Under the pieces are notes generated by a model. That model searched no databases. It saw only the letters and a program-made list of their open reading frames with translations, and was not told where the DNA came from. A stretch of 63,731 nt of DNA, counting the filler, from Octopus bimaculoides (lineage: Eukaryota), in NCBI RefSeq assembly GCF_001194135.2. It is 5 parts of 5 records of this genome, joined end to end, with 100 filler letters (N's around TTAATTAATTAA, not from the genome) between each part and the next. Parts side by side here need not be neighbours in the genome. Positions count along the whole stretch, not along the records: positions 12,681 to 33,335 come from NC_068998.1; 4 more parts are not named here. One strand, written 5' to 3'. Positions 12,681 through 33,257 of this stretch are shown here, piece by piece. A program made the translations under genes and the position numbers. Each line of letters begins with the position of its first letter. Position 1 is the stretch's first letter.

Positions 12681-12810
12681 GATCTTTGGCCAAAATTACT
12701 GGTCTTGGGCCAAAATTGCTGGTCTTGGGCCAAAATTGCTGGTCTTGGGCCAAAATTGCTGGTCTTGGGCCAAAATTGCTGGTCTTGGGCCAAAATTGCT
12801 GGTTTGGGTC
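12681..12810. repeat. 20-bp minisatellite (GGTCTTGGGCCAAAATTGCT), six units plus a partial
   Basis: Five exact units at 12701-12800, a variant at 12681-12700 and a partial at 12801-12810; starts at the contig edge. Confidence 0.95.
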
Positions 12811-14454: not shown

Positions 14455-14620
14455 ACACACACGAGGGGCTTCTTTCAGTTTCCGTCGACCAAATCCACTC
14501 ACAAGGCTTTGGCCCGCCCGAGGTTATAGTAGTAGATATCTGCCCAAGGTGCCACACAGTGGGTCTGAACCCGGAACCATGTAGTTGGGAAGCAAGCTTC
14601 TTACCACAATCCTGCGTCTA
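14455..14620 (-). mobile_element. SINE family A, 5' half
   Basis: Homologous head and central region. Confidence 0.75.
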
Positions 14621-14840
14621 CTGTGTAACAAAATTATCATTATCATTTTCTTCTTTTTTTTTTTGTTTTTGTCTTTGGTCAGTAAGTGTTACTTCCTGTT
14701 TGCTTCTATCTAGAAATCAAAGGAAATGACTACTATTCCCTTCAAACTTTGCTTTTGTGACTAGGGCATCAATGTTTTGAAACTGACCTATTTCCCATTA
14801 CATTTCAGACAGATTCAGCGTTGATTTGCTGAAACAAAAT

Positions 14841-14880
14841 TTTCTAGAACTTTCGAGAAGTTTCTAGAACGTTCTCGCAA
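14841..14880. promoter_or_regulatory. Heat shock element (HSF-binding array)
   Basis: tTTCt aGAAc tTTCg aGAAg tTTCt aGAAc gTTCt cGCAa: seven perfect contiguous inverted nGAAn pentamers plus one with a single mismatch. Confidence 0.8.
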
Positions 14881-14892
14881 TATAGAAGGCAG

Positions 14893-14926
14893 TATATACA
14901 GGGATCGTAAGCTCAATAGTTCAGTT
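14893..14926 (+). promoter_or_regulatory. TATA box and initiator
   Basis: TATATA at 14893-14898 and TCAGTT at 14921-14926. The Inr A (14923) is exactly 30 nt from the first T of the TATA box. Confidence 0.6.
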
Positions 14927-14984
14927 CGCTTTGAGCTGTCCAAGTGGAGACAAGTCATCATTGATAGCTGCAAGCGTCACATAT

Positions 14985-15246
14985 GGCGTCATTTGGTTGT
15001 AAGCATCCAGCAGACACATTTTGCTGCCTGTGGCAGATTTATCAAGACAAGAGCAAAAAAATACTCTCTGGTAATATCTGCTAAAACGTGTGAGACCTAC
15101 AAGGCATATATCCTAGGCGTCAGTTGGTTGTAAGCATCCAGCAGACGCATTTTGCTGCCTGTGGCAGATTTATCAAGACAAGTACAAAAATGTACTCTCT
15201 GATAATATCTGCTGAAACGTGTGAGGCCTACAAGGCATATATCCTA
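14985..15246. repeat. 131-bp tandem repeat, two copies
   Basis: Units 14985-15115 and 15116-15246 both begin GGCGTCA(T/G)TTGGTTGTAAGCATCCAGCAGAC and end GGCATATATCCTA. Confidence 0.95.
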
Positions 15247-16059
15247 ACAAAAGCAATGTTTTAAGGAAATATTAGCCATTTTTCATGCTTTCTAAGGGTA
15301 AGCAAATAGAAAATACCAGCTGTTACCCAAGGACAAAAATCGTGTTACAGTGTTATAAAAAAAGACATGCAAATAAAACTAAATTGTCAAAATAAAAAAC
15401 GTAAGAAATAAAAAGAAAAAATACCCATATAACTTTCCCATAGCATTATAAAAGTTGGCAATTTTCTTAAGTTGATAGCTTTGCACATCGTGAAGGCAGG
15501 ATATCTTAATTCAAGTAATGATTAACATTTCTGAAAATCGTTTGATGAAGAATAAGATTTATTAGATAGAATCAGAGATATTTTACAGCAGATAAAGAAA
15601 GCATAAGAGTAAAACACAAAGCAACGTGCGCACACGCACACACATAAGCGCGCACACGCACACACATAAGCGTGCACACGCACACACATAATCACACACA
15701 CACAAATTTGAATAGAAATAAGAATGCTGAAATAAAATTTCTTTTAAACTGTTCGCTAAAGTCCTATGAAACTTAATTAGTAGTTAGAAGGAATAAAATG
15801 TTCTAATTAAAAACAAAAAGGAAAAAAAACAACTTTTTTTTACGTTCTTAACAAGTCATTAGTGCTTGAGTTGCGTTCAACAACGAAAAGTTTATGCAGT
15901 TACTGTTAATTGTTGCTTTCATTTGATAATTAATTAAACACTGTCAAATCTGGCTTGAATTTAAATGAAAAACATATAAATATATTTGATGAACTTCTGT
16001 GCGCGTGCGCGTGTGCGTGTATATGTGCGCGTGCCTGCGTGTATGTATGTATGTATGTA

Positions 16060-16700
16060 TGTGAGTTCCTCCGCCCTTTGATGAGTCTTAATTTTCATCC
16101 CGCAGGGTGTCCAACAATCACCCTCCTCACCAGGCAAGCCTAGTGGAGGTGCCAGTTTAGTCACTGATGACCCGATCATGCAACAGGTTGCACTGGATCA
16201 CATGTTACCAGCAGCACCCAAGAGCGACCTGGCAAGGCACTTCTCTCTCAAACCTTGAACCCCAGCTCAAACAAAACTTACAGAAAGCTGAAAGGGAAAG
16301 TGCAGACTGTTGTAAGAAATATTAAACAGGAATGGTGAAACGATAGAGCAAAAGGGGCGCAAGAAGCAACTAATAGAAATGACACCAAGGGTTTGTTAAG
16401 GAGGGATATGGCCCAAAATCTTCTTCAATAGCTCCAGTGAGACCAGCAAATGGACATTTGCTTCTGCCTGACACCACTTCTATTCATAAGCGCTGGGTAG
16501 AACATTTTTCTTCACTTTTGCATAGACTATCATCTGCTGACATGAGGATGATAGAAAAAATCGAACATCTTCCAGTTATTGAGGAGATAGCATTTGAACC
16601 AAATCTAAATGACATTTATTTAGCTGTAAACAAGCTGAATAGCAATAAGTTTCCAGGGTCTGTTGTAATCTGTGCAGAGGTCTTGAAAACATCCCAACAG
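16060..16700 (+). mobile_element. RTE/BovB-type LINE remnant, internally deleted
   Basis: HKRWVEHFSSLLHRLSS...EPNLNDIYLAVNKLNSNKFPG...AEVLK matches the endonuclease-RT linker of RTE elements; preceded by a GC-richer 5'-UTR-like segment. Confidence 0.7.
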
Positions 16701-16739
16701 CACTGCACAAATGATGTTGGCATCGACTTTAAAAATTCA

Positions 16740-17000
16740 TCGTAACTCTCTCCTTATGCTATCCGTCCTCTACAAAATTCATGCTCGCATCACATTAAGA
16801 CAGAACTGTTTCACCTCAGCTGACCGTGCTCTCTTTAACATCATGCCACGACACATTAGAGATGAAGAAGTGCTCATAACATTCACACAGGTCCTGGACA
16901 AATATCTCCAATAAATTCACGATAAACCACCAACACCTGGATATATCTCTGCAAATAATAACTCTTTACTCGAATGGGCTATGATGCCCAAAGAATGACT
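16740..17000 (+). mobile_element. CR1/L2-like LINE 3' end
   Basis: TLRQNCFTSADRALFNIMPRHIRD...LDKYLQ*IHDKPPTPGY...NNSLLEW resembles the ORF2 C-terminus of invertebrate CR1-like LINEs. Confidence 0.6.
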
Positions 17001-17476
17001 GTAATATGAATCATCATTAAATGTCTTTTCCAGGTGGTGCTACTTGGACATAGTCAGGGCCAATTCTGTCCGGAACGTATTTAAGTATATTACAACGTGA
17101 ACATTAACGTTCTTGGTTACAGATTTCGAAATGACCAACAACTGGCCCATGACATTTCTTATAGAAGAGAAATTAATGTAGGATGTCTTCACCGTTCGCT
17201 GCACAAAAATACTACATAGGATGTTTTTATTCATAAGTATTAGTTATTGTTCTGTATTATTGCCAATGTTTAATCATGCGTAAACAAAATAGAATTTATA
17301 GTCAACGGAAGAATGCTGCTACCACTCTGAAAATTTTCCTACTTTACTTTCCTTTGACCTTTCACATTATTTATGTTTCTGACTGTATCTCATTGTAAGT
17401 TTGATTTCTGTACGATATATATATACATACACACACTTGTACATATATTGAATACACTCATATACATATATACACA

Positions 17477-17790
17477 TCATCATCATCATCATCATCGTTT
17501 AACGTCCGCTTTCCATGCTAGCATGGGTTGGACGATTTGACTGAGGACTGGTGAAACCAGATGGCTACACCAGGCACCAATCCGATTTGGCAGAGTTTCT
17601 ACAGCTGGATGCCCTTTCTAANNNNNNNNNNCGATTTGGCAGAGTTTCTACAGCTGGATGCCCTTTCTAACGCCAACCACTCAGAGAGTGTAGTGGGTGC
17701 TTTTTACGTGTCACCCGCACGAAGGCCAGTCAGGCGGTACTGGCAATGGCCACGCTCAAAATGGTGCATTTTATGTGCCACCTGCACCAT
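17477..17790 (-). mobile_element. Family D element
   Basis: (CAT)n-CGTTTAACGTCCGCTTTCCATGC...; interrupted by a short gap with duplicated flanks. Confidence 0.8.
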
Positions 17791-18299
17791 ATGTACATAT
17801 ATTTATATATTGACTATATCTAAGTATCTATCTCTTTGTCTGTCTGTCTCTATATTTATGTACACGCGCTTACCATAATATTCGAGGTGAAACTGGAGTA
17901 AATGTGAGTTGAAACCGGTAGACGTAGAAATATCACACAAGGTCTGAAGAGAGTATATTAAGTAAAAGTGAGTTTCCTTCTTCCATCAGACTGTGGGTTT
18001 GGGGGATTCTTTACTGCAAATATATTAGAATAATTGCATGCTTTCTTTTAATAGGAAGTTTGTTCCTAGGAAGTGTTGAAGTGATACATTGTGAGTTGGT
18101 AAGATGCACACTTTATCTTTCATTTAGAAGATTAAGAGTTTGACTGAAAGGCGGAGAACAGAAACAAAAGTTATATAAAGCTGTCTCTATTTGACAGCAC
18201 ATGCATGTAAAATGTTTTCAAGTGTAACAGTAGGATTTAAATAGAAATTAAATTAAAAACATGTCTTTATTGTCAAGTAATATTTCATTCATTCATCAG

Positions 18300-20000
18300 T
18301 ACTTTCATATTTTTCACTTGAAACTACTTTTCTAAGGAATTCATTGTCATTTTTAATTTTATCAAAAAGATTCAGATTAGCTTAGTAAAATGTTTATTTT
18401 AGTTATCAGAAATCTTCTGGCTAGCTCTTGCCATGCTGCTACTTTCATCTGATCGCACATTATTTGCTACAGAAAATATTCATTCAACTGGTGCAGAAGT
18501 ACCAAGAAGACAAAAATGCTCTTTATTAAAGAGCTAAGATTTTTAACTAGTATACATTTTTTCTTTGAAATACCACCAAAAAAATTAAAATGTTACTTAT
18601 TTTCATACTTAAAGTTCTGTATTGTGCAGCCTTCACCCTTAGAAACCTAAAAGCTCAGTGCAATAACAATTCTATGAAATAATTTATCAAAATTTATTAC
18701 TTGCTTTCTAATCCTTTGGTAAATTCACCTTAAATGCAGACTACTCCACATTCGGCCAAGATATATTACCAGAATTTAATCACTCAAATTATTCTACCTA
18801 TTCAAAGTTCTAAGTACGAGAGACATCTCTCATGAAACTTTAAATTCTCGCTTCGTTTTTTTTTTTCATTATTATCACTGTTTTCTTCAATACACAGTTT
18901 TTTTGGGTTTTTTTTTTTGCTTTTTCTTTTTTCTATATTTGTAATCAGATTTTCCATTTCTTTGATATGTGTGCATTAAAATTGTCCTTCTATATAGCCA
19001 GAAACGATCTGTTGAAATGACTAAGCTGTCTCTGCATAAACCATAAATACATTTCTCCAAAATCTCTTTCAAAGAATTGATTTATAAGTTACGGATAGCA
19101 TTCTTTGCAGCATTGACAAAATTTTGTATTACCATGCTGTAATAACTTCTTTTATATTTCAGTCCGGCGAAGTCATTAAATTCTTTTAGCTGTGTTACAC
19201 GAACTGTCTCGATGTAAAAATGTTTAAAAATTTTTTACAATAAGTGCTTCGATATCAGTTGGTAATACATGAACTGCTGTTTGGAGATAGCTGCGCACAA
19301 GATGTGCAGCACAACTAATGCCAACAAGGTCACTTGCAAATTTCGTTTTTAATCGTTTCTAATTAGATAAACAGATTGTTTTTGTTTTTTTTGTTCTACA
19401 TCACCAAAATTTGTGTTGCAGTTGTTCTGTCAACCTGTGATTGACAATAACTGACTCTAAGGCATGAGTCAAAATCTCAGCCATCTAAACTGGAAGTTTG
19501 CATAACCCAAAATTTGACTTGTAGTCTACTGACCAGGAAAGTAATATCAAACGTTGAAAAGTATCATTTCAACATCTTTTCGATTCAAAGGATCCATAAA
19601 AATTGTCACAAATTTACCAAGCTGAGCTATTGGTAAAATTACATTTAAAATGTTGGCCGCATATTTTGTCCATTCTAGACGAAACTTTGGTTCAAAAAGT
19701 TTTGAGACCAACTTTCATGAACGGTCAGATATCTTGAAACTCAATTTTGGTAAAAGTGTATGGAAATCAAAAGTGGTTTCTTTAGCGACAATGACAAGCT
19801 CCAATAATCCTTATTTCTGGTTTTATAAAATATATCCTGTCGTGACCAACTAGCAACAAAATTGCTTTGTGCCATTAAGATTTCAAATGACCTTTAATAT
19901 CTGACCTATCTCCATGCACCACAGAGACATCTGCATAACTGTGATCACATTTTACTCTGTTTTCTTTTTTTGGAAAATGGTAACCCTTGCTTTTCGGCAT
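18300..20000 (-). pseudogene. Near full-length decayed hAT transposase
   Basis: Read piecewise across frames: ATG at 20000 (MPKSK), BED-finger remnant VKC..HGDRSDIKGHLKS*WHK, KLFEPKF...TK, NNCNTNFG, GISCAAHLV...TAVHVLPTDIEALIVK, TVRVTQLKEF, and C-terminal GTSAPVE*IFS. Many stops and frameshifts. Confidence 0.75.
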
Positions 20001-20120
20001 TGTAAAAGTAAATCAAGAATTTTTAAGAGAAATATGTACGAAATATAAAAGAAAAGGGCAATATTAACTATAGATAATAACTAGTTTATTCTCGAACGCG
20101 CCAACACCAACAGAAATTTA

Positions 20121-20950
20121 GGATCTAGTTCAAAACGGGGGCGCCAGTATTTTCTTAATGAAACACTTTGAAATTTGGGACACTGGTAGAATGTGTCATA
20201 TAAAACATCTTTTTCTCTTAGTCTTCTTAAGAAAAATTATTATATTGCAACTTATTTCATGTTAAAGTTGTTGTATTTCTGTAATTTCAACCAATGACTG
20301 ACGTCCATTCAGCCGAATACAGTAAGTGCTGACTACATAAACAAACGATTCTCAAACGATTCTGGCGGTGATAAAATTATTATTTCCTTGTCAAAAAATG
20401 GCTGAAGCATATTGGCAGTAGCTAATAAACCTTTCTATTATAGGCACAAGGCCTGGTTTTNNNNNNNNNNNNNNNNNNNNNNNNNNNNNNNNNNNNNNNN
20501 NNNNNNNNNNNNNNNNNNNNNNNNNNNNNNNNNNNNNNNNNNNNNNNNNNNNNNNNNNNNNNNNNNNNNNNNNNNNNNNNNNNNNNNNNNNNNNNNNNNN
20601 NNNNNNNNNNNNNNNNAGATGTTAACGAAATTATATTAAAAATAAAACGAAGGAAAACGAACACACGCGTGTTGCCTCTCTGCAAAATGTCAGAAGTAAT
20701 GGAGATTAAATACGCTTTACACCGCTTAAACTGCCAAAGGAGTAACTGTAAACAGCTGAATACTTGTCAGTGATTGGTTGAAATTATCGAAATAAGACAA
20801 TTTTTTACATGAAATAACTTCGAATACAAAAAATTTTTTCTGTTCTATAACACAAAATAGATAAGTATACGAAGTTTGAAAGTCTTTCGGTACCAAAAAC
20901 ACTACATAAAACATAAATGAAAACTGGTGCCCCCGTTTTGAACTAGATCC
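20121..20950. mobile_element. Non-autonomous TIR transposon (MITE) with 8-bp TSD, possibly Merlin-like
   Basis: TIRs GGATCTAGTTCAAAACGGGG... and ...CCCCGTTTTGAACTAGATCC. Perfect TSD GAAATTTA at 20113-20120 and 20951-20958. Contains a gap and a family C SINE tail. Confidence 0.85.
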
Positions 20951-21140
20951 GAAATTTACTCACACATACATACATACATACATACAAAGACACACACTAG
21001 ACCTAATCTGCAAGATCATTCCACTGTTAGCAAAAGTTCACTCCGGATATGTTACATACGCACTGCTCGCCTCCCAGACGTAGTCAGTTGTCATTTTAAC
21101 AATGTTGTTCTTATAGCATCATGAATATTTTGGGAGTAAT

Positions 21141-21438
21141 TTTTTAGGGAGAATCGCATGACCGTGATATGTAGAACACATTATCGAAAGCGAAAATCGC
21201 CAAAATAAAAAAATAAAAAAGTTACAGCCATTTTTCCCTCAGTGTCTAATCCCAATGTCCACCAAAAAAAGACCCCACCCCCGGGGTGTTGGGGGAGGGG
21301 TCGGGGTCTAAAATTTTTTTAGAGAGAATCGCATGACCGTGATATGTAGAACGCATTATCGAAAGCGAAAATCGCCAAAATTAAAAAATAAAAAAAGTTA
21401 CAGCCATTTTCCCTCAGTGTCTAATCCCAATGTCGACC
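21141..21438. repeat. ~123-bp direct repeat pair separated by a GC-rich hairpin
   Basis: Units ~21141-21263 and ~21316-21438 (GAGAATCGCATGACCGTGATATGTAGAAC...CCCAATGTC); spacer AGACCCC...GGGGTCT. Confidence 0.9.
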
Positions 21439-21629
21439 AATATCCGAAGTATCATACATGTAATTTCTATCAAATGTTACTATAGTCTCAGTGTTGCTGC
21501 GAGATTTGCTATTTCAGTCAAAGAACAAGAGTTTAAATGACAAAAACAGTCATATTTGGAAGTAGGCTGGTCCCTGGCACATACTACAGGGGCTCACTAG
21601 ACTCCCTATTGAGCTCTACAGCAGTAAAA

Positions 21630-21915
21630 ACTTTAACAGCAAATCAAAGAATTGGCAAGCAAGCTTAATTCAAGCCATTCAATTGTTCACCGTCATCTTC
21701 CACAGCTTGGAAAGGTGCCCAAACTTGGAAAATGTGTTCCCTGTGATTTGACAGAAGCCAATCGAAAATCATGGCTGGACATCTGTTCATCTCTTTACTC
21801 CCGTGAACAAATATCACCATTTTTGAACAATGGATTTTTAAATGAAAATGTTAAGCAACGCAGGCAATGGCTTAGTTGAGGTGTACCGGCAAAACCACAA
21901 CCCCAAAAAGACCTA
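21630..21915 (+). pseudogene. Mariner transposase fragment
   Basis: ASKLNSSHSIVHRHL..LGKVPKLGKCVPCDLTEANRKSWLDICSSL..PFL...NVKQRRQWLS: a degenerate WVPHEL motif region. Confidence 0.8.
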
Positions 21916-23065
21916 TACAATAGTTGAATTCGAATGAAACAGCTCTGTGAGATTAATCTTATGGTGAAAACCCCGTCAAAAAATATTAGCTACAAAAAAT
22001 GTAGTGTGGTCTTAAGTGACAAAATGGTGATTATGTTAACAAATTAAAACATTTTTATCATGTTAAGATATTTAACATTATAAAAGATACATAACGCAGA
22101 ATTCAAAGACTTACGTGTTCACTGGGGAAATAGATTTGGGCTACGAAACTTCATACTACAGTTGGAATTTTCTGGAGCACAACGCTTCTGTAATTCGGAC
22201 TGTCTAGGATTAAGAACTCCTCGGTTGAAATATTGGTCACGCTAGCATCGACGTACTGAAGACAAAACGATGGGGTGGGGCGTTTATAGGTACAACGTTT
22301 TTGATCACTGGTCTGTTCAATTAAGGTTCGAATCTAATGAATTACAATAAAAACACAAACGTTTCGGAGGTTAGATTAAATAATAACAATCTTTGGAACC
22401 TACAGCGTTGATCTCGAAAGACAAATGAAGGAAGCCTCAACAGGTTGAAGATAGCAGATAAATCTCTATCACATTATGCCCTATCGTTAAATAAAAATGG
22501 ACGGACACATCTATTAATGTAGTTTGGTATTTCTGTACGTACAAAAAACAAAACAAAACAAAATACGACCGGATGTCAACGTCTTTGATCTGAAGCTTGT
22601 CTGATCGATCAGAGTGTGGGAGTGAGACTGATCCAGTGTTAAATTACCACCGTCACTACTACTACCTCGATATTTTCATTCTACGATGACAAATACACTT
22701 TTAGCCATCATCAATTATAGTATTAATCTCCTTCAACGCAGGCATGAAGCAGACTTTTTCACTAATCACGTGTAGAATAGAATCGTTCCCTTTATTTTTC
22801 TTTTAATCCCTCCCGGATCGAGTTTGTTTCATTCATAAAATCATCCCCCACCCGCTTTAATTTTGCTCAGATTGCTTTCAAATTTGGTGTATCAATAAAT
22901 TTCTGAAAAATTTATATTTATCAATTAGAATTTTATTGTAGATATTTTTCGTCAATTGTCTTAGTATTTTTCATATATATTTTACATAATTTCGTGAAGT
23001 TTTTCTGTGGTTTTCTGTTTTTACTGTTGCTTAGAATGGCTGCATCCACATTCAAGCCATTTAAT

Positions 23066-23582
23066 TGTAGTGTTTTTGGTACCGAAAGACTTTCAAACTT
23101 CGTATACTTATCTATTTTGTGTTATAGAACAGAAAAATATTTTTGTATTCGAATTTATTTCATGTAAAAAATTGTCTTATTTCGATAATTTCAACCAATC
23201 ACTGACAAGTATTCAGTTGTTTATATATACTCCTTTGGCTGTTTAAGCGGTGTAAAGCGTATTTAATTTCCATAGCTTCGTTTTGCTTTTTTCTTTTTAA
23301 ATTTGCTGTTTTACCCTAACCCTAACCCTATCACCGATAGAATTGTTTCAGAATCGTTTGTTTATGTAGTCGGCACTTAATGTATATCGGCTGAATGGAC
23401 GTCAGTGACTGGTTGAAATTATAGAAATACGACAACTTTAACATGAAATAATTTGGGGATTTCTTTTTTTTTTTAAGAAGACTAAGAGAAAAAGATGTTT
23501 TATATGACACATTCTACCAGTGTTCCAAGTTTCAAAGTGTTTCGTTAATGAAAAATGTGGCCCCCGTTTTAAAAAAAGATCC
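23066..23582. mobile_element. Second, inverted and truncated copy of the 20121-20950 MITE
   Basis: Reverse-complement match to both halves of copy 1; ends CCCCCGTTTTAAAAAAAGATCC; internal CCCTAACCCTAACCCTA. Confidence 0.85.
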
Positions 23583-25734
23583 CAACAAGAGTCAGAAAGT
23601 GGTTGGTGGGAATTTGTACTGGCAATACACATGCAATGGTGGCAACGAATGCCTGTTAGTAAGGACAGGGACATGGCTGGATGGAACCACCTTTCCTCTT
23701 ATGACTATATTGTTATTTAATGTGTCCTTCGTTTTTAAAACGTTAGAGCATAGCATGAGGGAGATTTGGCTGTTATTTCTAGCAAATTGAACAACCACCC
23801 ATTGGTTCATTTGCTGATGTGTATAAGTAAACAAAAACTAAAGGAAATGGGTCTTCACATGTTTCTAGGATGATTATTCCAGTTGTATGGTCAACTGAAC
23901 TGGTTACACATTCAACTGGTATTTATTTTATCAACCCTGAAAGGCAAAGTCAGCATAAGTGAAATTTGAACTCAGAATGTAAAGCATTTTGCCTAGATAA
24001 GAACTTCAATGGCCCAAGAGAGGCTCCTTGGACGAGCCACAATTTCCATAGAACATGAAATTTGTTGAAAAATTCTACTCCAAGAGCTTGTAAAAAATTT
24101 TTCAAGACAGAAAGCTCGCTAAATTAGCTTCTAAGTACCAAGAGTAAAAAACAGTATTTAAATATTTCAACAACCAATAATAAAAAAAAAAACATCTTTG
24201 AGTTAAATCAAATCAAAGACAAGAGCTTGATGAACTGCTGTTTGTTTACCATATTTGCTCGCATCCAATTAGAAAATATTAAATTTTCAATACATCATGT
24301 TTATTANNNNNNNNNNNNNNNNNNNNNNNNNNNNNNNNNNNNNNNNNNNNNNNNNNNNNNNNNNNNNNNNNNNNNNNNNNNNNNNNNNNNNNNNNNNNNN
24401 NNNNNNNNNNNNNNNNNNNNNNNNNNNNNNNNNNNNNNNNNNNNNNNNNNNNNNNNNNNNNNNNNNNNNNNNNNNNNNNNNNNNNNNNNNNNNNNNNNNN
24501 NNNNNNNNNNNNNNNNNNNNNNNNNNNNNNNNNNNNNNNNNNNNNNNNNNNNNNNNNNNNNNNNNNNNNNNNNNNNNNNNNNNNNNNNNNNNNNNNNNNN
24601 NNNNNNNNNNNNNNNNNNNNNNNNNNNNNNNNNNNNNNNNNNNNNNNNNNNNNNNNNNNNNNNNNNNNNNNNNNNNNNNNNNNNNNNNNNNNNNNNNNNN
24701 NNNNNNNATATATGCCTGATACGTGGGTAGGTATACAGCTGTGTATGTGTGTGTGAAAGAAAGAAAGAGAAAGAGGGAGGGAGGGAGGGGGAGAGAGAGA
24801 GGAAGAAAGAAAGAAACGACATTGGCCTGCGTGAAGACGAGAGTTACGTCCCTTTGATATGGTACTACCTCTGAAAGTTTTCAAAAGTTGTGTCCCTTTG
24901 AATCCAAAGTCGATATCCCTGTAAAGGAAAGAGAAAGAGGGAAAGAATTGATCAATTTCTGTCGCTATACAACGGGGATTCAGGTATTCGACCAGTTGAA
25001 TTACGAATAGCCAGCTCGTTGAATTAATAGGAAAGTGGCTGAACATTCTCCTGATACGGATACTCCGGGTGCCATTAACATAATTCTAAGACAGAATCAG
25101 TGTGACAGAGTACAAGTTATACTCTTGTACTCTTTGAATTCCAGGTATGTAGTGACGTGAAATTATGCAAGTACATTAAGGAAGTACAATCTACGCATGC
25201 GCAAGGGACTTGCCTTCCCGGAAGTCCCTCGAGTACGCATGTGTAGTAAAACCAGTACTTAAAGAGTTTCTTTCACTTTCTAACCCTCTTAGCGCGATGC
25301 CTTCGATCTAATAACTTGCTCTTGAGCGCAATACCTTCGACGTGACAGCTACTTGCTCCTTTGGCATGCATCAACGAAGCTCTTAACCTTCCAATGCCGA
25401 TCACAAGTTAACTAGCAGCTGCTAAGCTGAATGGCACAGGATTTGTAAAACCAAGCATCACCAAAAATAAAACTTATTTTTATTATGTTGGTAATTGTTC
25501 TATTGTTTCTTAATATATAATTTTGTTGAAAGGTGATAGAGAGAGACTAATGTCTCTATTGCAACTATCAACCTTTTACAGGTACAATCCATATCATGCT
25601 CACACAATTTCATTCGGCTGACGCTTTTGAAAATCACATTTGCCCAAAATGCTATGCACTCGTATTGAACAATATGGTTATGTCAATACACCACGTATTT
25701 ACGTGTATATATGTTGTTTATTCATTTTTTTTTT

Positions 25735-26063
25735 ACTTATTTCAGTCATCTGACTGCTGCCATGCTGGGACACCACCTTGAAGAATTTTTAGTCGAATGG
25801 ATCTACTTATTTCTTTTTAAGTCTGGTACTCAGTTTATCTGGGGTTTTTTTTGTCAAACCGCTAAGTAACGGGATCGTAAACACACCAACAGCAATTGTC
25901 AAGTGGTGGTGATGGGCAAACACAACACACACACATACGTACGTACGACAGGCTTCTTTCAGTTTCCATCTACGAAATCCACTCGCAAGGATTTGGTCGG
26001 CCCGAGGCTATAGCAGAAGATATGTGGTTGGAAAGCAAACTTCTTACCACACAGGCACGCCTA
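25735..26063 (-). mobile_element. SINE family A, diverged
   Basis: Tail, central region and partial head homologous to 92-461. Confidence 0.75.
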
Positions 26064-26811
26064 TAAGAGAGAGACGAGCGAGACCCGTGAATATTTCATG
26101 AAATTAATGGTAAACCTATTTGGGTTATTTCTGGTCGATTTTGCCTTTCAGCCTTTCGCGGTCGATAAAAGAAAGTAATAGTCAAATACTAGAGTCAATA
26201 TAATCAACTAACCGCCTTCCTTAAGTGCTGGTTTTGAGTCACAGTTTAAAACCATTATTATTAAAAGGGAAATTAAATACCTGAGTATATGAATTAGATC
26301 AAATCTTACTGGAAATAGAAACGTCTATGCTTCAGATCTGCGAAATTCTTCTCATTCTGCCATGCTACTTCATTCAAAACAATATGCACAACCATTCTTA
26401 CTAGAAATTACACTTCTCGTTATTTCAATTTCCAACCTAGTAGCATTTTATTTATTTTCTGTGGTTTCAGTCATTGGACTCTGGCCGTGCTAAAATACCA
26501 TCACAAGGCTTTTTTTGTTCTTTTCATTTTATAAGTAAAAATTAATCATTGTTGCAAGGGGAGATGTTTTTAATGTACCAGATTCTCAATCGATACTGAT
26601 AAACACTCACCAAACACACAACAGTAGATTCCAACCAAATGGATCTCAAACTATAATAAAAATCTTCCTCACAGATATTCCGATTGAATAAACAGGATAT
26701 ACACATGGAGTTCTAAACACTTGTTATTTGTCCTGCCGAGCAATTTAAATCTGTCTGTCTGTATGTATGAATACAGGTATATAGGTAGGCAGGTATTATT
26801 AGTGAGGGCAT

Positions 26812-27030
26812 ATAGCTCAGTGGTTAGTGTATTGCATTCGATCCCGAGACTGTGATTTCAATTCCTGAATCAGATGATGCGTTGTGTACTTGAACAAAAC
26901 ACTTCATCTCACGTAGCTCTGCGATCACTTCGACACCAGTTGTGGTACACCGTGCACCTGTTTGGGTTACGTCAATTTTATGGAGGGAGTGAGCAAATGC
27001 ATACCGCACATACATTCGATCACTATTAAC
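26812..27030 (+). mobile_element. SINE family B2, diverged
   Basis: GGGCATATAGCTCAGTGGTTAG...CTTGAACAAAACACTTCATCTCACG. Confidence 0.6.
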
Positions 27031-27570
27031 AAATCATTTGTGCAAGTCGTTCAGGAGATTCCATCATACGGAGGGGAATATATTGAATAAAATCATAACT
27101 AACTGATCCTCCTGTATTTTTTTTTTTTTTACCCAAAGCCAGTAACTTTTCAGCACCCTCTTGTACATTAGACCAAATGTTTAGTGGAATTTCTTCTGGC
27201 TCTTTGCATTCCAAGTTCAAATGCCAATGATGTCAGTTTTGCCTTTCATCACTTCAAGGTTGATAAAAAAATTTAAAAAGTACCAGCTGACCACTGGGAG
27301 TGGGGTTCAATATAATTGACTTCCTCTTCCCCTCAAAAATCACTTGTCTTGTGCCAAAAATTTAAAAGAATCATATATTCCATCTGGCAAATAAACTCCA
27401 AGTAAAAATCATAAACGAAAGCAACATTTAGCATTTATCTTTTCTGCTATTATCTAAACATCACAACTACAGCATAGAACTGTTTCAATGCAAGTTTTGG
27501 AAAGTATTTCTTCATATAGACTTATCATATTAATATTATTAATCTGTTGTAGCAACATTTATATTTCTAG

Positions 27571-27936
27571 TTTTTTTGTTGTTGGCACTCCGTCGCTTAC
27601 GACGTCGAGGGTTCCAGTTGATCCGATCAACGGAACAGCCTGCTCGTGAAATTAACGTGCAAGTGGCTGAGCACTCCACAGACACGTGTACCCTTAACGT
27701 AGTTCCCAGGGATATTCAGTGTGACAAGGCCGACCCTTTGAATTACAGGCACAACAGAAACAGGAAGTAAGAGTGAGAGAAAGTTGTGGTGGAAGAGTAC
27801 AGCAGGGTTCGCCACCATCCCCTGCCGGAGCCTCGTGGACGTTTTAGGTGTTTTCGCTCAATAAACACTCACAACGCCCGGTCTGGGAATCGAAACCGCG
27901 AGTCCGCTGCCCTAACCACTGGGCCATTGCGCCTCC
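27571..27936 (-). mobile_element. SINE family B (OR-type), complete with TSD
   Basis: Perfect 10-bp TSD ATATTTCTAG at 27561-27570 and 27937-27946; (AAC)n/A tail. 14-nt deletion in the tRNA-like head between two TCGCGGT repeats. Confidence 0.9.
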
Positions 27937-28479
27937 ATATTTCTAGTAATAAAGGAATGAAAGAATTTTCATTATTTTTCAATATCATAAACTCTTCATT
28001 ACTACTTCAGTTTCTTTATTTCTTTTATTATCTTATCGTTGGCAAAACTGGAACACATAAATGCTAAGTCATTTTCTTTGAATTAATAAATAGATTATCA
28101 TTATCATTATCATCATCAAATTACACCCGTTTTTCTCTACTGGTATTGGACGGGCATAGCATCATTTTTACCACAATGTTGATCCTACATTCTGAAGTCA
28201 GAACTCACCACTTCTATGTGTTTCCCTCTTCTGCAAATTTCTTCCACTTGGATTATTTGTTAGATCCGATATACAGTTTATGGTTTTCTTTGTTGTCTAT
28301 TTTCTTTCTTTTCTTTTAATGGTCTCAGTCATTAGACTGTGGCAATGCTGGAGCACCATCTTAAAATGATCAACCACATCATCTGGTCTGATGCTTATCG
28401 CATCAATCTCATAACAAACGAAATGTGAAGGAGACGCTTGTTTGAAGGGAGATAACTTAGTAGGACGTAAATATTGATT

Positions 28480-28625
28480 TCAAATTTTGGCACAAGGCCA
28501 GCAAGTTCTGGGCTGGGGATAAATCGATTATATCGACCCCAGTATTCAACTGGTACTTATTATTTTATCGACCTCGAAAGGATGAAAGTCAAAGTCGATC
28601 TCAGCGGAATTTAAACTCAGAACTG
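28480..28625 (-). mobile_element. SINE family C, 3' part
   Basis: GGCACAAGGCC...AACTGGTACTTA...GAAAGGATGAAAGTCAAAGTCGATCTCAGCGGAATTT. Confidence 0.7.
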
Positions 28626-28915
28626 CCACCCTCCCCAAATTTTGGAACCAGATTATTGGGAAGCCATGTCTTTGTTCTGTGTGTGCATGATGGTTGCAGG
28701 AGTCACTATCATGTGAGTTGTGTCATTCATTTCTAGTCTTCTGTGAAAAAATGTTTAGCTGAGGGGAAATATTTTTTTCTAGGCACAAGGCCCGAAATTT
28801 GGTAGATGGAAACAGAAAGAAATCTGTTGTATGTGTGAGAGGGAGGGAGGAGAGAGAGAGAGATTGAAAGAGCATTTCAAAGAGACGTGATATATTTTAA
28901 CCTTTTATCATTTAC

Positions 28916-29241
28916 TGGCACTCCATCGGTTACGACTATGAAGGTTCCAGTTGATCCAATTAATGGAAGAGCTTGCTCGTGAAATTAACGTATAAGTAGC
29001 TGAGCACTCCACAGACACACGTACCCTTAATGTAGTTTTCAGGGAGATTTTAACAGGACACAGGAGGTGACAAAGCTGGTCCTTTTGAAATATAGGTACT
29101 ACCCATTTTTGCCAATTGAGTGGCCTGGAGCAACATGAAATAAAGTGTTTTACTCAAGGAAACAACATGTCACCAGGAATTGAACTCATGACCTTACAAT
29201 CACAAGCTGAATACCCTAACCACTAAGCCATGAACCTGCAC
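28916..29241 (-). mobile_element. SINE family B2, full length (B-type 3' tail, different 5' half)
   Basis: 28916-29090 matches the family B tail; 29100-29241 matches the B2 head. Confidence 0.75.
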
Positions 29242-30171
29242 CCTTTAGCATTTAAACTGGCCATATCCGGCCAAAATATTATACTTCTTTTATGTTCAAG
29301 CTGGATGTATCTGGCTTCTCACACCCACCCTGCAATGTCATCCTAAAAATATAGAATTACATCATTGAAATCTCAGGGCTACAAGATAATACATTATTAA
29401 TTCAAAAATGTGAATAAATATGCATTGAATTTGATAGAATACTTTGAATGCTAACGGGTTAAATATATAATTAAGAAATATTAATAACTTTACATAGTTA
29501 TGTCAATTAGTTGCCCAGAAGCACAATTTTCAATATTTTCAGTTACAATTATGCAATCTGAAGTAGTCTAATGGAAAAGTCATTAAGATGCCAAGCTTAT
29601 ATATCGTTTTTAGGTTTGTTTCCGAGGTATGGTTGTCTTATTGAGAACTTTGGGTTGCAACATGCTGCCAAGAGTTCAACAAAGGTCACAGCATGTTGAC
29701 TCCACCAAACATGGTCTGATGCGGAGGCTATGAATTTGAGCATGAGATCACTGATATATTATATATATACATATATATATATCCATCATCATCATTTCAC
29801 ATCCTCCTTCTATGCTGAATAACAACATCATGCTCTAATGTTTCAGTTCTGTATAGTTTCTACAATCAAATGCCAGATGCCCTTCCTAATGCCATCCAAT
29901 TTAGAGTGTACCGAGTAACTTTTTCCATGGCACCACCACTAGTGATGTCACCATGTAATGAACAACGTATAAAAAAAAAACTCATCACTCCTCCTTTTAG
30001 GGGCAGGACAAGATTTTCCACATACATCCACAGCACTTCTCTTAGATTTCACAACAGATATTAACAACATCTTGAGTTGGATGGGTTTTTTTTCTATTTT
30101 TTACTTGTTTCAGTCATTATACTACGGCCATGCTGGGGCACAGCCTTGAAGAATTTTAGTCAAATTTATTG

Positions 30172-30285
30172 CAGTTGTCCTTCAGTTTTTCTAAGCCCTG
30201 TAAAAGAACTCAGGTGGTTGGGATTCCAGCCAGGCCTTGTGCAATACCCTTAAAGCAAGGAACTTTTCAACACCCTCTTGGGTGT
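30172..30285 (-). mobile_element. Mariner-derived MITE fragment
   Basis: Minus strand GAGGGTGTTGAAAAGTTCCTTGCTTT (mariner-type TIR) followed by a LEKLKD-like transposase 3' remnant; a related lone TIR lies at ~27130-27165. Confidence 0.55.
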
Positions 30286-31970
30286 ATAAATATATAATCT
30301 AAGGTCCTGGTAGGATGCAATCAACCCAAGTTCTTCAGGTGTAGAAAATCCTGGTTTCACGTTAGTAAAATCATTGTGTGGATTTAGCGAAGAGTAAAAT
30401 ACAATCTAAATAATAAGAAAAAAAGAATTTGACCACACCTTTAAGTAAAGATGTGTTAAAGTAGGATATGGTAGTGTTTCACAACATTGGGTGATGTTGC
30501 AGTATTGGTGCGTCTTGTATATAATGGTACACTGTGTTGTAAGCTGGCATAAGATAGTGTCTAAGTGTTGTACTGTAAGGTTAAAGGATTCCGTTACATA
30601 ATCCTAGAAGGAACACTCATAAACATTGCAGAATGGTGAAGTTGAGGAGACTCATGTCCAGCTTGCACTTCTGCAAATTGATGATGTCTAAAGGGAAAAT
30701 ACAGACAGTGGAGGAAGGATTGCGAAAACTGATTAGTGTGGACTTAGCGTGATGAAAGGTGGTGCACCCAGTGGCTGTGTGAAGGAAGGTGAGCAGACAG
30801 CCTGCTAGTTTAAAGGGCATATGCCACAGGTAGAAGAGACGTGCCAGTTGGCTAATCATCATTAAGTGTCTTGTTCCTGGAGACATACAGAGCCCCAAGC
30901 TGGTCATGAACTACAAACCTTTATTTCTGAACTAGGTGTACTATATACACACACATCAAGGAATAAGACACCCAATGATAATTAGAACTGGATAATAAGG
31001 TAGTTATATGTAAATTCTAAATATGCTAACTATAATTTCATTGAGTCTTTGGTAACCCATGTTGCTTAAATAATTTCTGGATTTAAAACAAGGAGTCGTT
31101 TTAGTGAAATTATAATTTCAAATACAAATGACATTTATTACGTGCTTTCTCAACTCATCGTCCTCAAACATTTTTTATGGCTTAATATCTTTCCTAATAT
31201 TATTAACCACTCAAGTATTTAAGTTTGTGTGCTTTGTTTCAATTAAATAAATCAATGCATCTTTGTTCGATAAACACTAAAAGCCGCGTTACTTCAACAA
31301 GAGGAAAGTGCTGAAATTTATAGTAATTTGTCAAATATTAAGATAAAATCTATACACACATTTTAAAAAGCATTAGATTAAAACAACGATGTATACACAA
31401 ACGCAGAACAGTAGTAGCTGTAATATTTTTGTCTCAGAGAAACTTCTCGTAAGAGAATTGGTGTATTAAAAACGCAGAACTCGCTCAGAACGTAGTCAAC
31501 TTATCGCCAAACACCGGTGTTTCTTCTAACTCTAATTGCTCAAAATATAAAGGAGGCTACGACTTTACTTTGGTTTTTGTAATATTATTATTATTATTAT
31601 CAAATATACAGAAAGTGGACAGTGACTATAACCTTCTCAGACACTGGATTATTGTTAAATGAGTGAAGTTACTGCGGTTAATATTTACAAACTGATCGCG
31701 GCACGACTGGCTAGCTAACAGTGTTTTCGACAAGTAGCACTTCACGCTTGAGAGGTGTTAGGAAAGATATTAAATTACAAAACATTGTCTAGTTATAACA
31801 TAAAATGAGTAATTTTATGACAGGGAAAAAAACGAAAAAAAAATTAGAATTTCAATATAGTTTCATAACTTCAAACATTTAATTAAAACTGTAAAGAGAA
31901 TAGATTCGTGTTATGAGTTTGTGTATGTGTAATTATTTCTTATTACAAACAGATAAGAAGAAAAGGAATC

Positions 31971-31976
31971 TTTATT
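31971..31976 (-). terminator. Candidate polyadenylation signal for glutaredoxin-3
   Basis: AATAAA on the minus strand 48 nt after the stop codon, followed by a U-rich stretch. Confidence 0.5.
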
Positions 31977-32023
31977 GATCAATACATAGATCATTTGTGT
32001 CACCTTAAATAGGATTAATTATT

Positions 32024-33004
32024 TTATGAAGTTCCTTTTAAGGTATCAACTAGTTGATTGTTTTCTTTAAGTTCTTTAATAATGTCAAGTCCACCTACCA
32101 GTTCACCATTCACATACAACTGGGGGTATGTAGGCCAGTCGGAATAGGTTTTCAACCCTTGCCTCACACTTTCATCCTGAAGAATATCAAACGTTTCGTA
32201 AGTGACGCCAGTTTCTTCCAAAATACCAATAGTAGTTTTACTGAATCCACAACGTGGTGTATCGGGGGAACCTTTCATAAACAGCATAACACTTGCTTTG
32301 TTGATGAGGGTTTTCAATTTAGCATTCAAATCTTCTTTCTGGGGCAACATCTTTTGAAGCTCGTTCGATTCTGACAATTCTTTGACTATATCCAATCCAC
32401 CGATAAGTTCCCCTTTGTGATATAACTGAGGATAAGTAGGCCAGTCGGAGAATTTCTTCAATCCCTGGCGCACATTTTCATCGCTGAGTATGTTAAAATG
32501 AGAATAGTCGATATTGTGCTCATTCAGGATACCGATGATGGTACGACTGAAACCACATCTAGGTTCATCGGGAGTACCCTTCATGAAAAGCATGACAGGA
32601 GCTTGGTTAACGAGCGCTTGTAGTTTCACATTTATGTCTTCTTCGCTCTCTTCAGCTGGTATCGAAACTGTAGCTTCGACGAGATTCTTGACTTTTTTAC
32701 ATAGTTCCAAGGCATCGACACCTTCCAGAGTATCGATCCGTGATTTATTTTTGAAAAAGATAAACACAGGAACGTTAGCTACTTGATACTTCTTTGTCAA
32801 TTCAACAAGATCTTCAGCCTCCACCAAAAGGAACCGTACGTTTACATAATGAGGGTCTTTTGCCAGTTCACGCAATACATCATTCATTTGCTCACATTCT
32901 CCCGACCATTTAGCAGAGAAATGTAAAACAACAAGGTTCGATCTCGCCTCAGTAAGGATTGTATTCAGTCTGTCCACGCTGGTAACTTCCTCAACCTGCG
33001 CCAT
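32024..33004 (-). CDS. GLRX3: Glutaredoxin-3 (PICOT), 326 aa, single coding exon
   Basis: Uninterrupted ORF with an N-terminal thioredoxin-like domain (WSGEC at the WAPQC-type site) and two monothiol glutaredoxin domains, each with FMKG.P..PRCGFS, SDWPTYPQLY and GELxGGLDI. Good start context CAAAATGG. Confidence 0.97.
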   Translation of the reverse strand: MAQVEEVTSVDRLNTILTEARSNLVVLHFSAKWSGECEQMNDVLRELAKDPHYVNVRFLLVEAEDLVELTKKYQVANVPVFIFFKNKSRIDTLEGVDALELCKKVKNLVEATVSIPAEESEEDINVKLQALVNQAPVMLFMKGTPDEPRCGFSRTIIGILNEHNIDYSHFNILSDENVRQGLKKFSDWPTYPQLYHKGELIGGLDIVKELSESNELQKMLPQKEDLNAKLKTLINKASVMLFMKGSPDTPRCGFSKTTIGILEETGVTYETFDILQDESVRQGLKTYSDWPTYPQLYVNGELVGGLDIIKELKENNQLVDTLKGTS

Positions 33005-33257
33005 TTTGCTGTAACATGCGGTGTGATGTCAACCTGTTCGTTTTATTAAACGGCTATTCTGACTAAACCGATCTTCTTCAGAATAGAGAGTTAGACTACT
33101 GAAAATATCCCGACTTCAAATAATTGAAAATTAATGAAAATAAATACATACACACACACAAAATGTTTACGTACATATATGTGTATATCGTGCATCTTCC
33201 GTCTTACATTTATCATATAAATAAATAAATAAATATATATATATATATATATATATA

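What the first reader, a model, noticed from the sequence alone, without database searches (positions are those of the whole stretch)
14841..15303. Textbook heat-shock promoter driving an apparently non-coding, tandem-repeat transcript
Seen in sequence: seven perfect contiguous inverted nGAAn units (14841-14875) plus one near-perfect unit, TATATA at -30, and a TCAGTT initiator at 14923. Downstream come two 131-bp tandem units, only a 33-codon ORF (14983-15084, MASFGCKHPADTFCCLWQ...), and a donor-like AGG|GTAAGC at 15298. Established: three contiguous units suffice for one HSF trimer, and HSE-TATA-Inr is the layout of hsp70-type promoters. Drosophila hsr-omega is a heat-induced lncRNA built on tandem repeats. 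Inference: this is a strongly heat-inducible cephalopod lncRNA, or the non-coding first exon (14923-15297) of a gene whose other exons are not recognisable here. No hsp ORF is visible in the window.
Basis: partly seen in the sequence, partly recalled or inferred. Interest (0 to 1): 0.82.

Follow-up and report, generated by a model that had tools for sequence, protein, structure and literature searches.

The report
Orphan heat-shock promoter in octopus DNA
An Octopus bimaculoides intergenic region holds a near-ideal heat-shock-factor binding array with a correctly spaced core promoter, but no heat-shock gene follows it; it sits inside a transposon-like inverted-repeat cassette and most likely makes a short non-coding RNA on heat stress, which has not been tested.

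Summary
There are seven perfect alternating TTC/GAA pentamers (14841-14875). TATATA lies at -30 and TCAGTT has its A at 14923. Two 131-bp units are 93% identical. There is a 33-codon ORF and a strong donor at 15298. The HSE is far beyond chance (0 of 100 shuffles; about 0.003 expected per genome).

The window is O. bimaculoides chromosome CM046618.1, with the predicted start at about 13,900,515. I found no coding exon on the + strand for 17 kb downstream. Pfam gave none, and two searches of 5.8 billion proteins gave only a repeat-derived fragment. The next + strand gene, riboflavin kinase, lies 21.5 kb away and has a TATA-like motif just upstream of its ATG.

One new feature changes the picture. 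The promoter and both units are bracketed by a 93-bp imperfect inverted repeat (14666-14758 / 15247-15339). This makes a 674-bp MITE-like cassette, and the donor lies in its right arm. Three AATAAA signals follow at +450 to +490.

Best reading: an HSF-responsive promoter, probably transposon-derived, that gives a short non-coding RNA. The hsr-omega analogy is weak, since there are only two repeat units. I could not obtain expression data, orthologues or genomic copy number. This is a new member of a known kind, of moderate interest.

The parts
14666..14758 (.). Left arm of a 93-bp imperfect inverted repeat that brackets the module
   Evidence: blastn gives 72% identity, E 1e-8. Local alignment scores 64 against shuffles of 21 +/- 2.8. 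The repeat finder lists it as I1.
14841..14875 (.). Heat shock element: seven perfect contiguous alternating nTTCn/nGAAn pentamers, -82 to -48
   Evidence: 0 of 100 shuffles match. All three GAA units are AGAA and three of four TTC units are TTCT, which is the preferred extended consensus (own knowledge). The variable bases lie at the unconstrained GAAnnTTC junctions (CT, GT, CG).
14876..14880 (.). Eighth, imperfect HSE unit (CGCAA), which extends the array to -43
14893..14898 (+). TATA box (TATATA) at -30 to -25
14921..14926 (+). Initiator TCAGTT; predicted start at A 14923 (CM046618.1 position about 13,900,515)
   Evidence: The start site is predicted from motif spacing and has not been observed.
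14923..15297 (+). Predicted 375-nt transcribed leader or first exon with no recognisable coding capacity
   Evidence: Six-frame search of 14760-15420 against 5.8 billion proteins found nothing. Pfam found nothing. Rfam found nothing. RNA fold z-score is -2.7.
14983..15084 (+). 33-codon ORF from the first ATG, probably not coding
   Evidence: C at -3. The unit-2 counterpart has no ATG, and the 6 amino-acid-position differences are all non-synonymous.
14985..15115 (+). 131-bp tandem unit 1
15116..15246 (+). 131-bp tandem unit 2 (93% identical to unit 1), which ends exactly where the right repeat arm begins
15162..15214 (+). 53-nt hairpin of about 22 bp inside unit 2; a weaker counterpart lies at 15031-15083 in unit 1
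   Evidence: unit 2 folds with z -3.7, unit 1 with z -0.45.
15247..15339 (.). Right arm of the 93-bp inverted repeat; it contains the donor-like site
15295..15303 (+). Donor-like AGG|GTAAGC (intron would start at 15298)
   Evidence: top 4 of 1095 GT sites in the piece
15372..15412 (+). Cluster of three AATAAA hexamers (+450, +469, +485); possible end of a short unspliced RNA

Best explanation
This is a real binding array for heat shock factor (HSF), joined to a TATA/Inr core promoter that points rightward. It lies inside a 674-bp cassette bounded by 93-bp inverted repeats, which is most simply an old non-autonomous DNA-transposon (MITE-like) remnant.

Inferred mechanism: on proteotoxic stress, two or three HSF trimers bind cooperatively to the 7-8 pentamers at -82 to -43. 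They activate RNA polymerase II at the TATA/Inr, and transcription starts near 14923.

The product is non-coding. It is either an unspliced RNA of about 470-510 nt ending at the AATAAA cluster (15372-15412), or a 375-nt first exon spliced from 15297 to unannotated non-coding exons. The two 131-bp units are a young local duplication, each carrying a hairpin. They are not an hsr-omega-type repeat array.

Shown: the motifs, their spacing and statistics, the inverted repeat, and the absence of recognisable coding sequence. Inferred: HSF binding, heat induction, the start site, the RNA ends and the transposon origin.
For: HSE:
- Seven perfect units plus an imperfect eighth; 0 of 100 shuffles; about 0.003 expected per genome; the only HSE in about 30 kb.
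- Variation among the 10-bp repeats falls only at positions HSF does not read, while all 21 core bases are intact.
- The flanking inverted-repeat arms are about 28% diverged and the 131-bp units 7%. A neutrally evolving HSE as old as the arms should have lost about 3-4 core bases.

Core promoter and RNA ends:
- TATA at -30 and TCAGTT sit at canonical spacing, 13 bp after the 8-unit HSE.
- A strong donor lies at +376 and three AATAAA at +450 to +490.

No coding sequence:
- Pfam finds no family in + strand segments of 30 aa or more over 14900-32009.
- The six-frame query of 14760-15420 and the + strand query of 15276-32010 found only a 40-aa repeat-derived match.
- The GenBank annotation has no CDS between window 22024 and 32024.
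- No Rfam family or tRNA was found.

Cassette: the inverted repeat is at 14666-14758 / 15247-15339.

Precedent:
- HSF1/HSF-1 directly drives non-coding RNAs (PMC9032817; PMC6765114).
- Transposons carry functional HSEs (PMC6927752).
Against: - There is no expression, 5'-end, HSF-binding or chromatin evidence of any kind. Logan RNA-seq contigs for O. bimaculoides appear not to be indexed.
- The orthologous interval in O. vulgaris and O. sinensis could not be reached, so conservation is unknown.
- No target-site duplication was found for the inverted repeat. No second copy exists in about 70 kb of other octopus DNA. The transposon origin is therefore an inference from the repeat alone.
- The HSE has 10-bp periodicity (TRF) and could owe part of its length to slippage.
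- TATA-Inr pairs also arise at SINE/microsatellite sites in this genome.
- A silent, chromatin-repressed relic would look the same in sequence.
Confidence: 0.45

Rival explanations
1. It is a conserved, single-copy host lncRNA gene of the heat-shock response. It would be functionally analogous to Drosophila hsr-omega or human NEAT1/SatIII, with the repeat and hairpin units binding RNA-processing proteins during stress.
For: - The promoter quality is strong.
- No coding capacity was found.
- Unit 2 folds unusually well, z -3.7.
- HSF1-driven lncRNAs are an established class (PMC9032817).
Against: - There are only two 131-bp units, 7% diverged, and no array.
- Unit 1 folds no better than shuffles, z -0.45.
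- The module sits inside an inverted-repeat cassette typical of transposon remnants.
- Conservation is untested.
- There is no sequence relation to any Rfam family.
Confidence: 0.15
2. It is the non-coding first exon of a protein-coding gene whose coding exons lie far downstream. One form would be a heat-inducible alternative 5' exon of riboflavin kinase, 21.5 kb away. Another would be an unannotated gene.
For: - A strong donor lies at 15298.
- The next + strand CDS is riboflavin kinase, starting at window-equivalent 36465.
- An acceptor-like ...ccttcag|g lies about 70 nt upstream of its ATG (read by eye).
Against: - Riboflavin kinase has a TATA-like motif about 100 nt upstream of its ATG, so it may have its own promoter (read by eye).
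- An intronless glutaredoxin-3 gene on the opposite strand would have to sit inside the intron.
- No coding exon was recognised in 17 kb.
- Three AATAAA lie 75-110 nt after the donor.
- The donor lies in the inverted-repeat arm.
Confidence: 0.15
3. It is a silent relic with no present function. It could be a decayed transposon promoter, or an HSE-like array made by 10-bp slippage that happens to lie next to TATA and Inr-like motifs.
For: - The array has 10-bp periodicity.
- TATA-Inr pairs are common at repeats in this genome.
- The surroundings are rich in SINE, LINE and mariner remnants.
- The locus has no annotated gene.
Against: - All 21 core bases are perfect, while non-contact positions vary and flanking repeats have diverged 7-28%.
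- The joint occurrence of HSE, TATA at -30 and Inr within 90 bp is very unlikely by chance.
Confidence: 0.2
4. It is a heat-inducible primary microRNA transcript, with each 131-bp unit giving one precursor hairpin.
For: Each unit holds an inverted repeat. The unit 2 hairpin has about 22 bp and folds with z -3.7.
Against: - The hairpin is only 53 nt with a 4-nt loop and no clear basal stem, which is too short for canonical Drosha/Dicer processing (own knowledge).
- No Rfam miRNA match falls there.
- The unit 1 hairpin is degraded.
- The octopus miRNA paper's held supplements hold no full sequences, so that check was uninformative.
Confidence: 0.03

Closest known systems
Drosophila hsp70-type heat-shock promoter (HSEs upstream of TATA and an Inr)
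   Same: It has contiguous inverted nGAAn units just upstream of a TATA box at -30 and a TCAGTY initiator. The proximal HSE ends at about -45. The AGAAnnTTCT preferred form is present (the consensus is own knowledge).
   Different: No HSP coding sequence follows. There is one long 7-8-unit array rather than several separate 3-4-unit HSEs. The promoter lies inside an inverted-repeat cassette. Induction is untested.
Drosophila hsr-omega (93D) heat-inducible lncRNA
   Same: A candidate HSE-driven transcript with no long ORF, a very short ORF near the 5' end, a donor site and tandemly repeated sequence.
   Different: hsr-omega carries 5-15 kb of about 280-bp repeats that organise omega speckles (own knowledge; cited within PMC9032817). 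Here there are two 131-bp copies. There is no sequence similarity and no evidence of nuclear retention or conservation.
Helitron-borne HSEs in Caenorhabditis (PMC6927752) and HSF-1-bound HSEs at ncRNA genes (PMC6765114)
   Same: HSEs are carried inside DNA-transposon sequence and can make nearby or non-coding transcripts heat-responsive. Here the HSE lies inside a transposon-like inverted-repeat cassette.
   Different: Helitrons have no terminal inverted repeats and carry many separate HSEs (10 in the example). Here there is a single array with its own TATA/Inr, and the family and copy number are unknown.
Mammalian HSF1-driven non-coding transcripts (NEAT1, SatIII, TERRA, SINE RNAs, enhancer RNAs; PMC9032817)
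   Same: A direct HSF target that yields non-coding RNA. The class includes both unique loci (NEAT1) and repeats.
   Different: There is no homology. The predicted RNA is much shorter than NEAT1 or SatIII. A TATA/Inr core promoter argues against a simple bidirectional enhancer RNA.
MITEs / internally deleted DNA transposons
   Same: Size is 674 bp, terminal inverted repeats are about 93 bp, there is no coding capacity, and it lies in a transposon-rich region.
   Different: No target-site duplication was found. The arms are only 72-78% alike. No other copy was seen in about 70 kb. An internal Pol II promoter with an HSE is not a usual MITE feature.

Membership tests
hsp70-type heat-shock promoter | At least three contiguous inverted nGAAn units (HSE) within about 250 bp upstream of the start site | tested here: met
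   Seven perfect units plus one imperfect at -82 to -43
hsp70-type heat-shock promoter | TATA box at about -30 and an initiator at +1 | tested here: met
   TATATA at -30 to -25 and TCAGTT with its A at 14923. The start site itself is only predicted.
hsp70-type heat-shock promoter | Drives a heat shock protein gene | tested here: not met
   No Pfam family was found on the + strand over 14900-32009. No protein match apart from a repeat fragment. No annotated CDS lies between 22024 and 32024.
hsp70-type heat-shock promoter | HSF binding and heat-induced transcription | not testable with these tools
   Needs ChIP or EMSA and RNA from heat-shocked animals
hsr-omega-like stress lncRNA | Long array (kilobases) of tandem repeats in the transcript | tested here: not met
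   Only 2.0 copies of a 131-bp unit, and no further copies in the piece
hsr-omega-like stress lncRNA | No long ORF, only a very short ORF near the 5' end | tested here: met
   The longest ATG ORFs in 14923-15297 are 33 and 24 codons. A 36-codon ATG ORF starts at 15285 and runs past the donor.
hsr-omega-like stress lncRNA | Heat induction, nuclear retention and conserved gene architecture among related species | not testable with these tools
   The orthologous interval is out of reach: the 10-kb flanks of the O. vulgaris and O. sinensis GLRX3 loci end at window-equivalent about 27.3 kb
MITE / non-autonomous DNA transposon | Terminal inverted repeats bounding a short non-coding element | tested here: met
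   93-bp arms at 14666-14758 / 15247-15339, alignment score about 15 sd above shuffles. No coding capacity.
MITE / non-autonomous DNA transposon | Target-site duplication flanking the repeats | tested here: inconclusive
   No duplication longer than 5 bp at plausible ends. The left end is blurred by a microsatellite and an adjacent SINE.
MITE / non-autonomous DNA transposon | Multiple dispersed copies in the genome | not testable with these tools
   No octopus genome search was available. There were 0 further copies in about 70 kb held, which only excludes a very abundant family.
Helitron-borne HSE | Helitron termini (5' TC, 3' CTRR with a subterminal hairpin, no terminal inverted repeats) | tested here: not met
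   The module is bounded by inverted repeats. Helitron termini themselves were not searched for.
microRNA precursor | Hairpin of about 55-70 nt with a roughly 22-nt duplex, a basal stem and a loop of about 10 nt or more | tested here: not met
   The hairpin is 53 nt with a 4-nt loop and a weak base. No Rfam miRNA hit falls there.

The most novel reading that the evidence does not exclude
The 674-bp inverted-repeat cassette is one copy of a mobile element family that carries a complete HSF-responsive promoter (HSE, TATA and Inr). Such a family would have seeded heat-inducible transcription units around octopod genomes. It would be a cephalopod counterpart of Helitron-borne HSEs in Caenorhabditis, but delivering whole promoters rather than binding sites alone.
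Probability: 0.15. Interest if true: 0.6.

Novelty: new member of a known kind. Interest (0 to 1): 0.35.

Why it matters
If the locus is heat-inducible, it would be, as far as I could find, the first candidate direct HSF target in a cephalopod that makes non-coding RNA. It would extend a class known from flies, worms and mammals (PMC9032817, PMC6765114).

If the cassette proves to be mobile, it would show transposons rewiring the heat-shock response in a second animal lineage (compare PMC6927752).

There is also a practical use. [quoted passage not shown] A compact endogenous block of about 110 bp (-82 to about +30) is an obvious candidate for an inducible expression tool.

Tried and rejected
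- **Transcript evidence through the protein and contig indexes.** An exact look-up of the 33-aa ORF found nothing. A six-frame query of 14760-15420 found nothing. O. bimaculoides RNA-seq seems not to be indexed, because its own GLRX3 protein was found only on the NCBI chromosome.
- **Hidden coding exons.** Pfam on all + strand stop-to-stop segments of 30 aa or more over 14900-32009 gave 0 families. A protein search of segments of 38 aa or more over 15276-32010 gave only a 40-aa, 93% match to an O. bimaculoides VWFD gene model, which is most likely repeat-derived. Its locus is not on record.
- **Known RNAs.** Rfam at E<=1 gave only low-complexity miRNA-like noise elsewhere in the piece. No tRNA was found.
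- **miRNA check.** The supplements of PMC9699675 hold no full miRNA sequences: a let-7 control string was absent. The negative result is therefore uninformative.
- **Solo-LTR idea.** TG...CA ends with duplications occur only at chance level and lack terminal inverted repeats.
- **Target-site duplication for the inverted repeat.** None was convincing.
- **Relation between the 131-bp unit and the repeat arms.** None was found.
- **Orthologues.** GLRX3 orthologues from O. vulgaris and O. sinensis were fetched with 10-kb flanks. Those flanks end at window-equivalent about 27.3 kb, 12 kb short of the HSE. Neither holds a copy of the module.
- **O. bimaculoides hsp70 promoters as comparators.** I had no cephalopod HSP70 query sequence and found no paper that held one.
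- **Riboflavin kinase as the driven gene.** Considered unlikely, because a TATA-like motif lies about 100 nt upstream of its ATG.
- **Bacterial promoter and terminator scan.** Irrelevant to this eukaryotic locus.

Full report
**Where the window comes from.** The piece is Octopus bimaculoides, assembly GCA_001194135.2, chromosome CM046618.1. The 326-aa ORF at 32024-33004 (- strand) is found exactly there. Window 22024-33335 is 100% identical to the fetched locus L001. Record coordinate equals window coordinate plus 13,885,592, so the predicted start site 14923 is at about 13,900,515.

**Check of the observation.** Every sequence claim is correct.
- From 14841 the pentamers read TTTCT AGAAC TTTCG AGAAG TTTCT AGAAC GTTCT. 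These are seven perfect alternating units. CGCAA follows and AAAAT precedes, each with 2 of 3 core bases.
- The seven-unit pattern never occurs in 100 dinucleotide shuffles. Base composition predicts about 0.003 such arrays per 2.3 Gb.
- It is the only run of three or more perfect units in the roughly 30 kb I hold for this species.
- TATATA is at -30 to -25, and TCAGTT places its A at 14923.
- The two 131-bp units (14985-15115 and 15116-15246) differ at 9 positions.
- The 33-codon ORF starts at the first ATG after the predicted start.
- AGG|GTAAGC at 15298 is among the four best of 1095 GT sites in the piece.

One caveat applies to the core promoter. A TATA-N-Inr pair occurs at five loci in the piece, at least three of the others at (TA)n-type microsatellites. 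The core-promoter match is convincing only because it lies 13 bp downstream of the 8-unit HSE and is not microsatellite.

**Signs of constraint on the HSE.**
- All three GAA units are AGAA and three of four TTC units are TTCT. This is the preferred AGAAnnTTCT form (own knowledge of the HSE consensus).
- The three GAAnnTTC junctions, which HSF does not read, all differ (CT, GT, CG).
- All 21 core bases are intact. Nearby sequence has drifted: the 131-bp units by 7% and the flanking inverted-repeat arms by about 28%.
- If the HSE were as old as the arms and neutral, about 3-4 core substitutions would be expected.
- TRF does see a 10-bp period, so slippage may have helped build the array. This argument is suggestive only.

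**What lies downstream.** I found no heat shock gene and no recognisable coding exon on the + strand.
- Pfam finds no family in any stop-to-stop segment of 30 aa or more between 14900 and 32009.
- A six-frame query of 14760-15420 against 5.8 billion proteins finds nothing.
- A query of + strand segments from 15276-32010 finds only a 40-aa, 93% match to an O. bimaculoides VWFD gene model, which is most likely repeat-derived.
- The GenBank annotation lists no CDS between window 22024 and 32024.
- By my reading, the interval holds a LINE-like fragment (about 16383-16911). It also holds a mariner-like element bounded by inverted repeats (20118-23585), SINE copies and three N gaps.
- The next + strand gene is riboflavin kinase. 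Its CDS starts at window-equivalent 36465, a TATA-like motif lies about 100 nt upstream of its ATG, and an intronless glutaredoxin-3 gene on the opposite strand lies in between.
- In the 33-codon frame, the 6 amino-acid-position differences between the two units are all non-synonymous, and unit 2 has TAG where unit 1 has ATG. Nothing suggests a peptide.
- No Rfam family or tRNA matches the region.

The whole module is bracketed by a 93-bp imperfect inverted repeat. The left arm is 14666-14758 and the right arm is 15247-15339.
- blastn gives 72% identity with E 1e-8. A gapped local alignment scores 64 against 21 +/- 2.8 for shuffles. The repeat finder reports the pair with a shorter seed.
- The right arm begins exactly where unit 2 ends, and it contains the proposed splice donor.
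- The unit from 14666 to 15339 is 674 bp, non-coding and bounded by inverted repeats. That is the anatomy of a MITE or an internally deleted DNA transposon.
- I found no convincing target-site duplication. There are no LTR-like ends. The arms and the 131-bp unit are unrelated.
- No second copy exists in the rest of the piece, in L001, or in 42 kb of O. vulgaris and O. sinensis DNA. This only excludes a very abundant family. Copy number in the genome could not be tested.

**The RNA that would be made.**
- From 14923 the transcript would carry a 62-nt leader, the two units and then the right repeat arm.
- Three AATAAA hexamers lie at +450, +469 and +485. An unspliced polyadenylated RNA of roughly 470-510 nt is as plausible as a 375-nt first exon spliced at 15297.
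- The 375-nt stretch folds somewhat better than shuffles, z -2.7.
- Each unit contains an inverted repeat. In unit 2 it forms a 53-nt hairpin of about 22 bp (z -3.7). In unit 1 the apical part is degraded (z -0.45).
- The hairpin is too short, and its 4-nt loop too small, for a canonical microRNA precursor. The one literature check I could make was uninformative.

**Attempts to bring in related sequence.**
- Glutaredoxin-3 orthologues (94% identical) exist in O. vulgaris and O. sinensis, and their loci were fetched.
- The 10-kb flank on the relevant side ends at window-equivalent about 27.3 kb, because that interval is longer in those species. The orthologous HSE interval is out of reach.
- Alignable non-coding flanks are 84-91% identical, so conservation of the HSE would be informative once the right interval is examined.
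- O. bimaculoides hsp70 promoters could not be obtained as comparators.

**Interpretation.**
- The sequence is best read as a working, or recently working, HSF-responsive promoter. Two or three HSF trimers would bind the 7-8 pentamers at -82 to -43 and activate a TATA/Inr core promoter that fires rightward at about 14923.
- The product is most likely non-coding.
- The inverted-repeat frame makes a transposon-derived origin the simplest account of why a complete heat-shock promoter sits alone in transposon-rich intergenic DNA.
- Both halves have precedent. HSF1/HSF-1 directly drives non-coding RNAs in mammals and worms (PMC9032817; PMC6765114). DNA transposons spread functional HSEs in Caenorhabditis (PMC6927752).
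- The hsr-omega analogy is weak. Two 131-bp copies are not a repeat array, and nothing is known here about nuclear retention or conservation.

**Rivals.**
- A conserved host lncRNA gene: 0.15.
- A non-coding first exon of a distant protein-coding gene, such as riboflavin kinase: 0.15.
- A silent relic: 0.20.
- A primary microRNA transcript: 0.03.

**Verdict.** I rate this a new member of a known kind and of moderate interest. Its main practical value is as a candidate compact endogenous heat-inducible promoter. [quoted passage not shown]

Noticed in passing
window 32024-33004 (- strand); L002, L003, L004: There is an intact, intronless 326-aa glutaredoxin-3 (PICOT-type) gene with one thioredoxin and two glutaredoxin domains. 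Orthologues 94% identical occur in O. vulgaris and O. sinensis, also as single 981-bp ORFs. A Logan RNA-seq contig from another octopod (SRR11869385) is colinear with the genomic sequence over 1.7 kb. So the intronless gene is probably expressed in that octopod, and the single-ORF form is shared among Octopus species. Glutaredoxin-3 is multi-exon in most animals (own knowledge), so this may be an old retrogene that replaced the parent.
   Followed up: partly
L001 1-6540 (window-equivalent 36465 onward, + strand): A riboflavin kinase gene (156 aa, Flavokinase domain) lies head to head with glutaredoxin-3, with about 3.5 kb between the two ATGs. No HSE of three or more units occurs anywhere in L001.
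   Followed up: partly
window 20118-23585: A mariner-like DNA transposon remnant is bounded by nested inverted repeats (arms up to 214 nt at 95%). It contains a decayed transposase-like ORF (21652-21879), a 175-bp internal tandem duplication (21140-21440) and a 156-bp N gap. Pfam did not recognise the ORF; the mariner call rests on my reading of the peptide.
   Followed up: no
window 16383-16911 (+ strand): ORF fragments resemble the region between endonuclease and reverse transcriptase of non-LTR retrotransposons (...IHKRWVEHFSSLL...). Pfam gave no hit, so this is an inference.
   Followed up: no
window 14461-14617 and 25945-26062; also 25718, 26443, 28301, 30086, 33251: At least two SINE-like repeat families are present. 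One copy ends about 50 bp upstream of the left inverted-repeat arm and is followed by (ATTATC)n and a T-rich microsatellite. Together with (TA)n tracts, these repeats create several spurious TATA-Inr motif pairs.
   Followed up: partly
window 12683-12808: A minisatellite of 6.3 copies of a 20-bp unit (TCTTGGGCCAAAATTGCTGG, 97% matches) lies at the left edge of the piece.
   Followed up: no
window 15628-15691 and 15998-16062: Two GC-rich CA/TG-type minisatellites lie on opposite strands, about 300 bp apart: a 22-bp unit GCGCACACGCACACACATAAGC x2.9, then its approximate complement. They give weak mir-297-like Rfam noise.
   Followed up: no
L003/L004 10982-20981 versus window 27300-32024: The interval 3' of glutaredoxin-3 is about twice as long in O. 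vulgaris and O. sinensis (10 kb) as in O. bimaculoides (about 4.7 kb). This shows lineage-specific insertions. Alignable blocks are 84-91% identical.
   Followed up: partly
window 17622-17631, 20461-20616, 24307-24707: There are three assembly gaps (10, 156 and 401 N). The sequence on each side of the first gap is a perfect 39-bp direct repeat (17583-17621 / 17632-17670), which looks like an assembly artefact.
   Followed up: no
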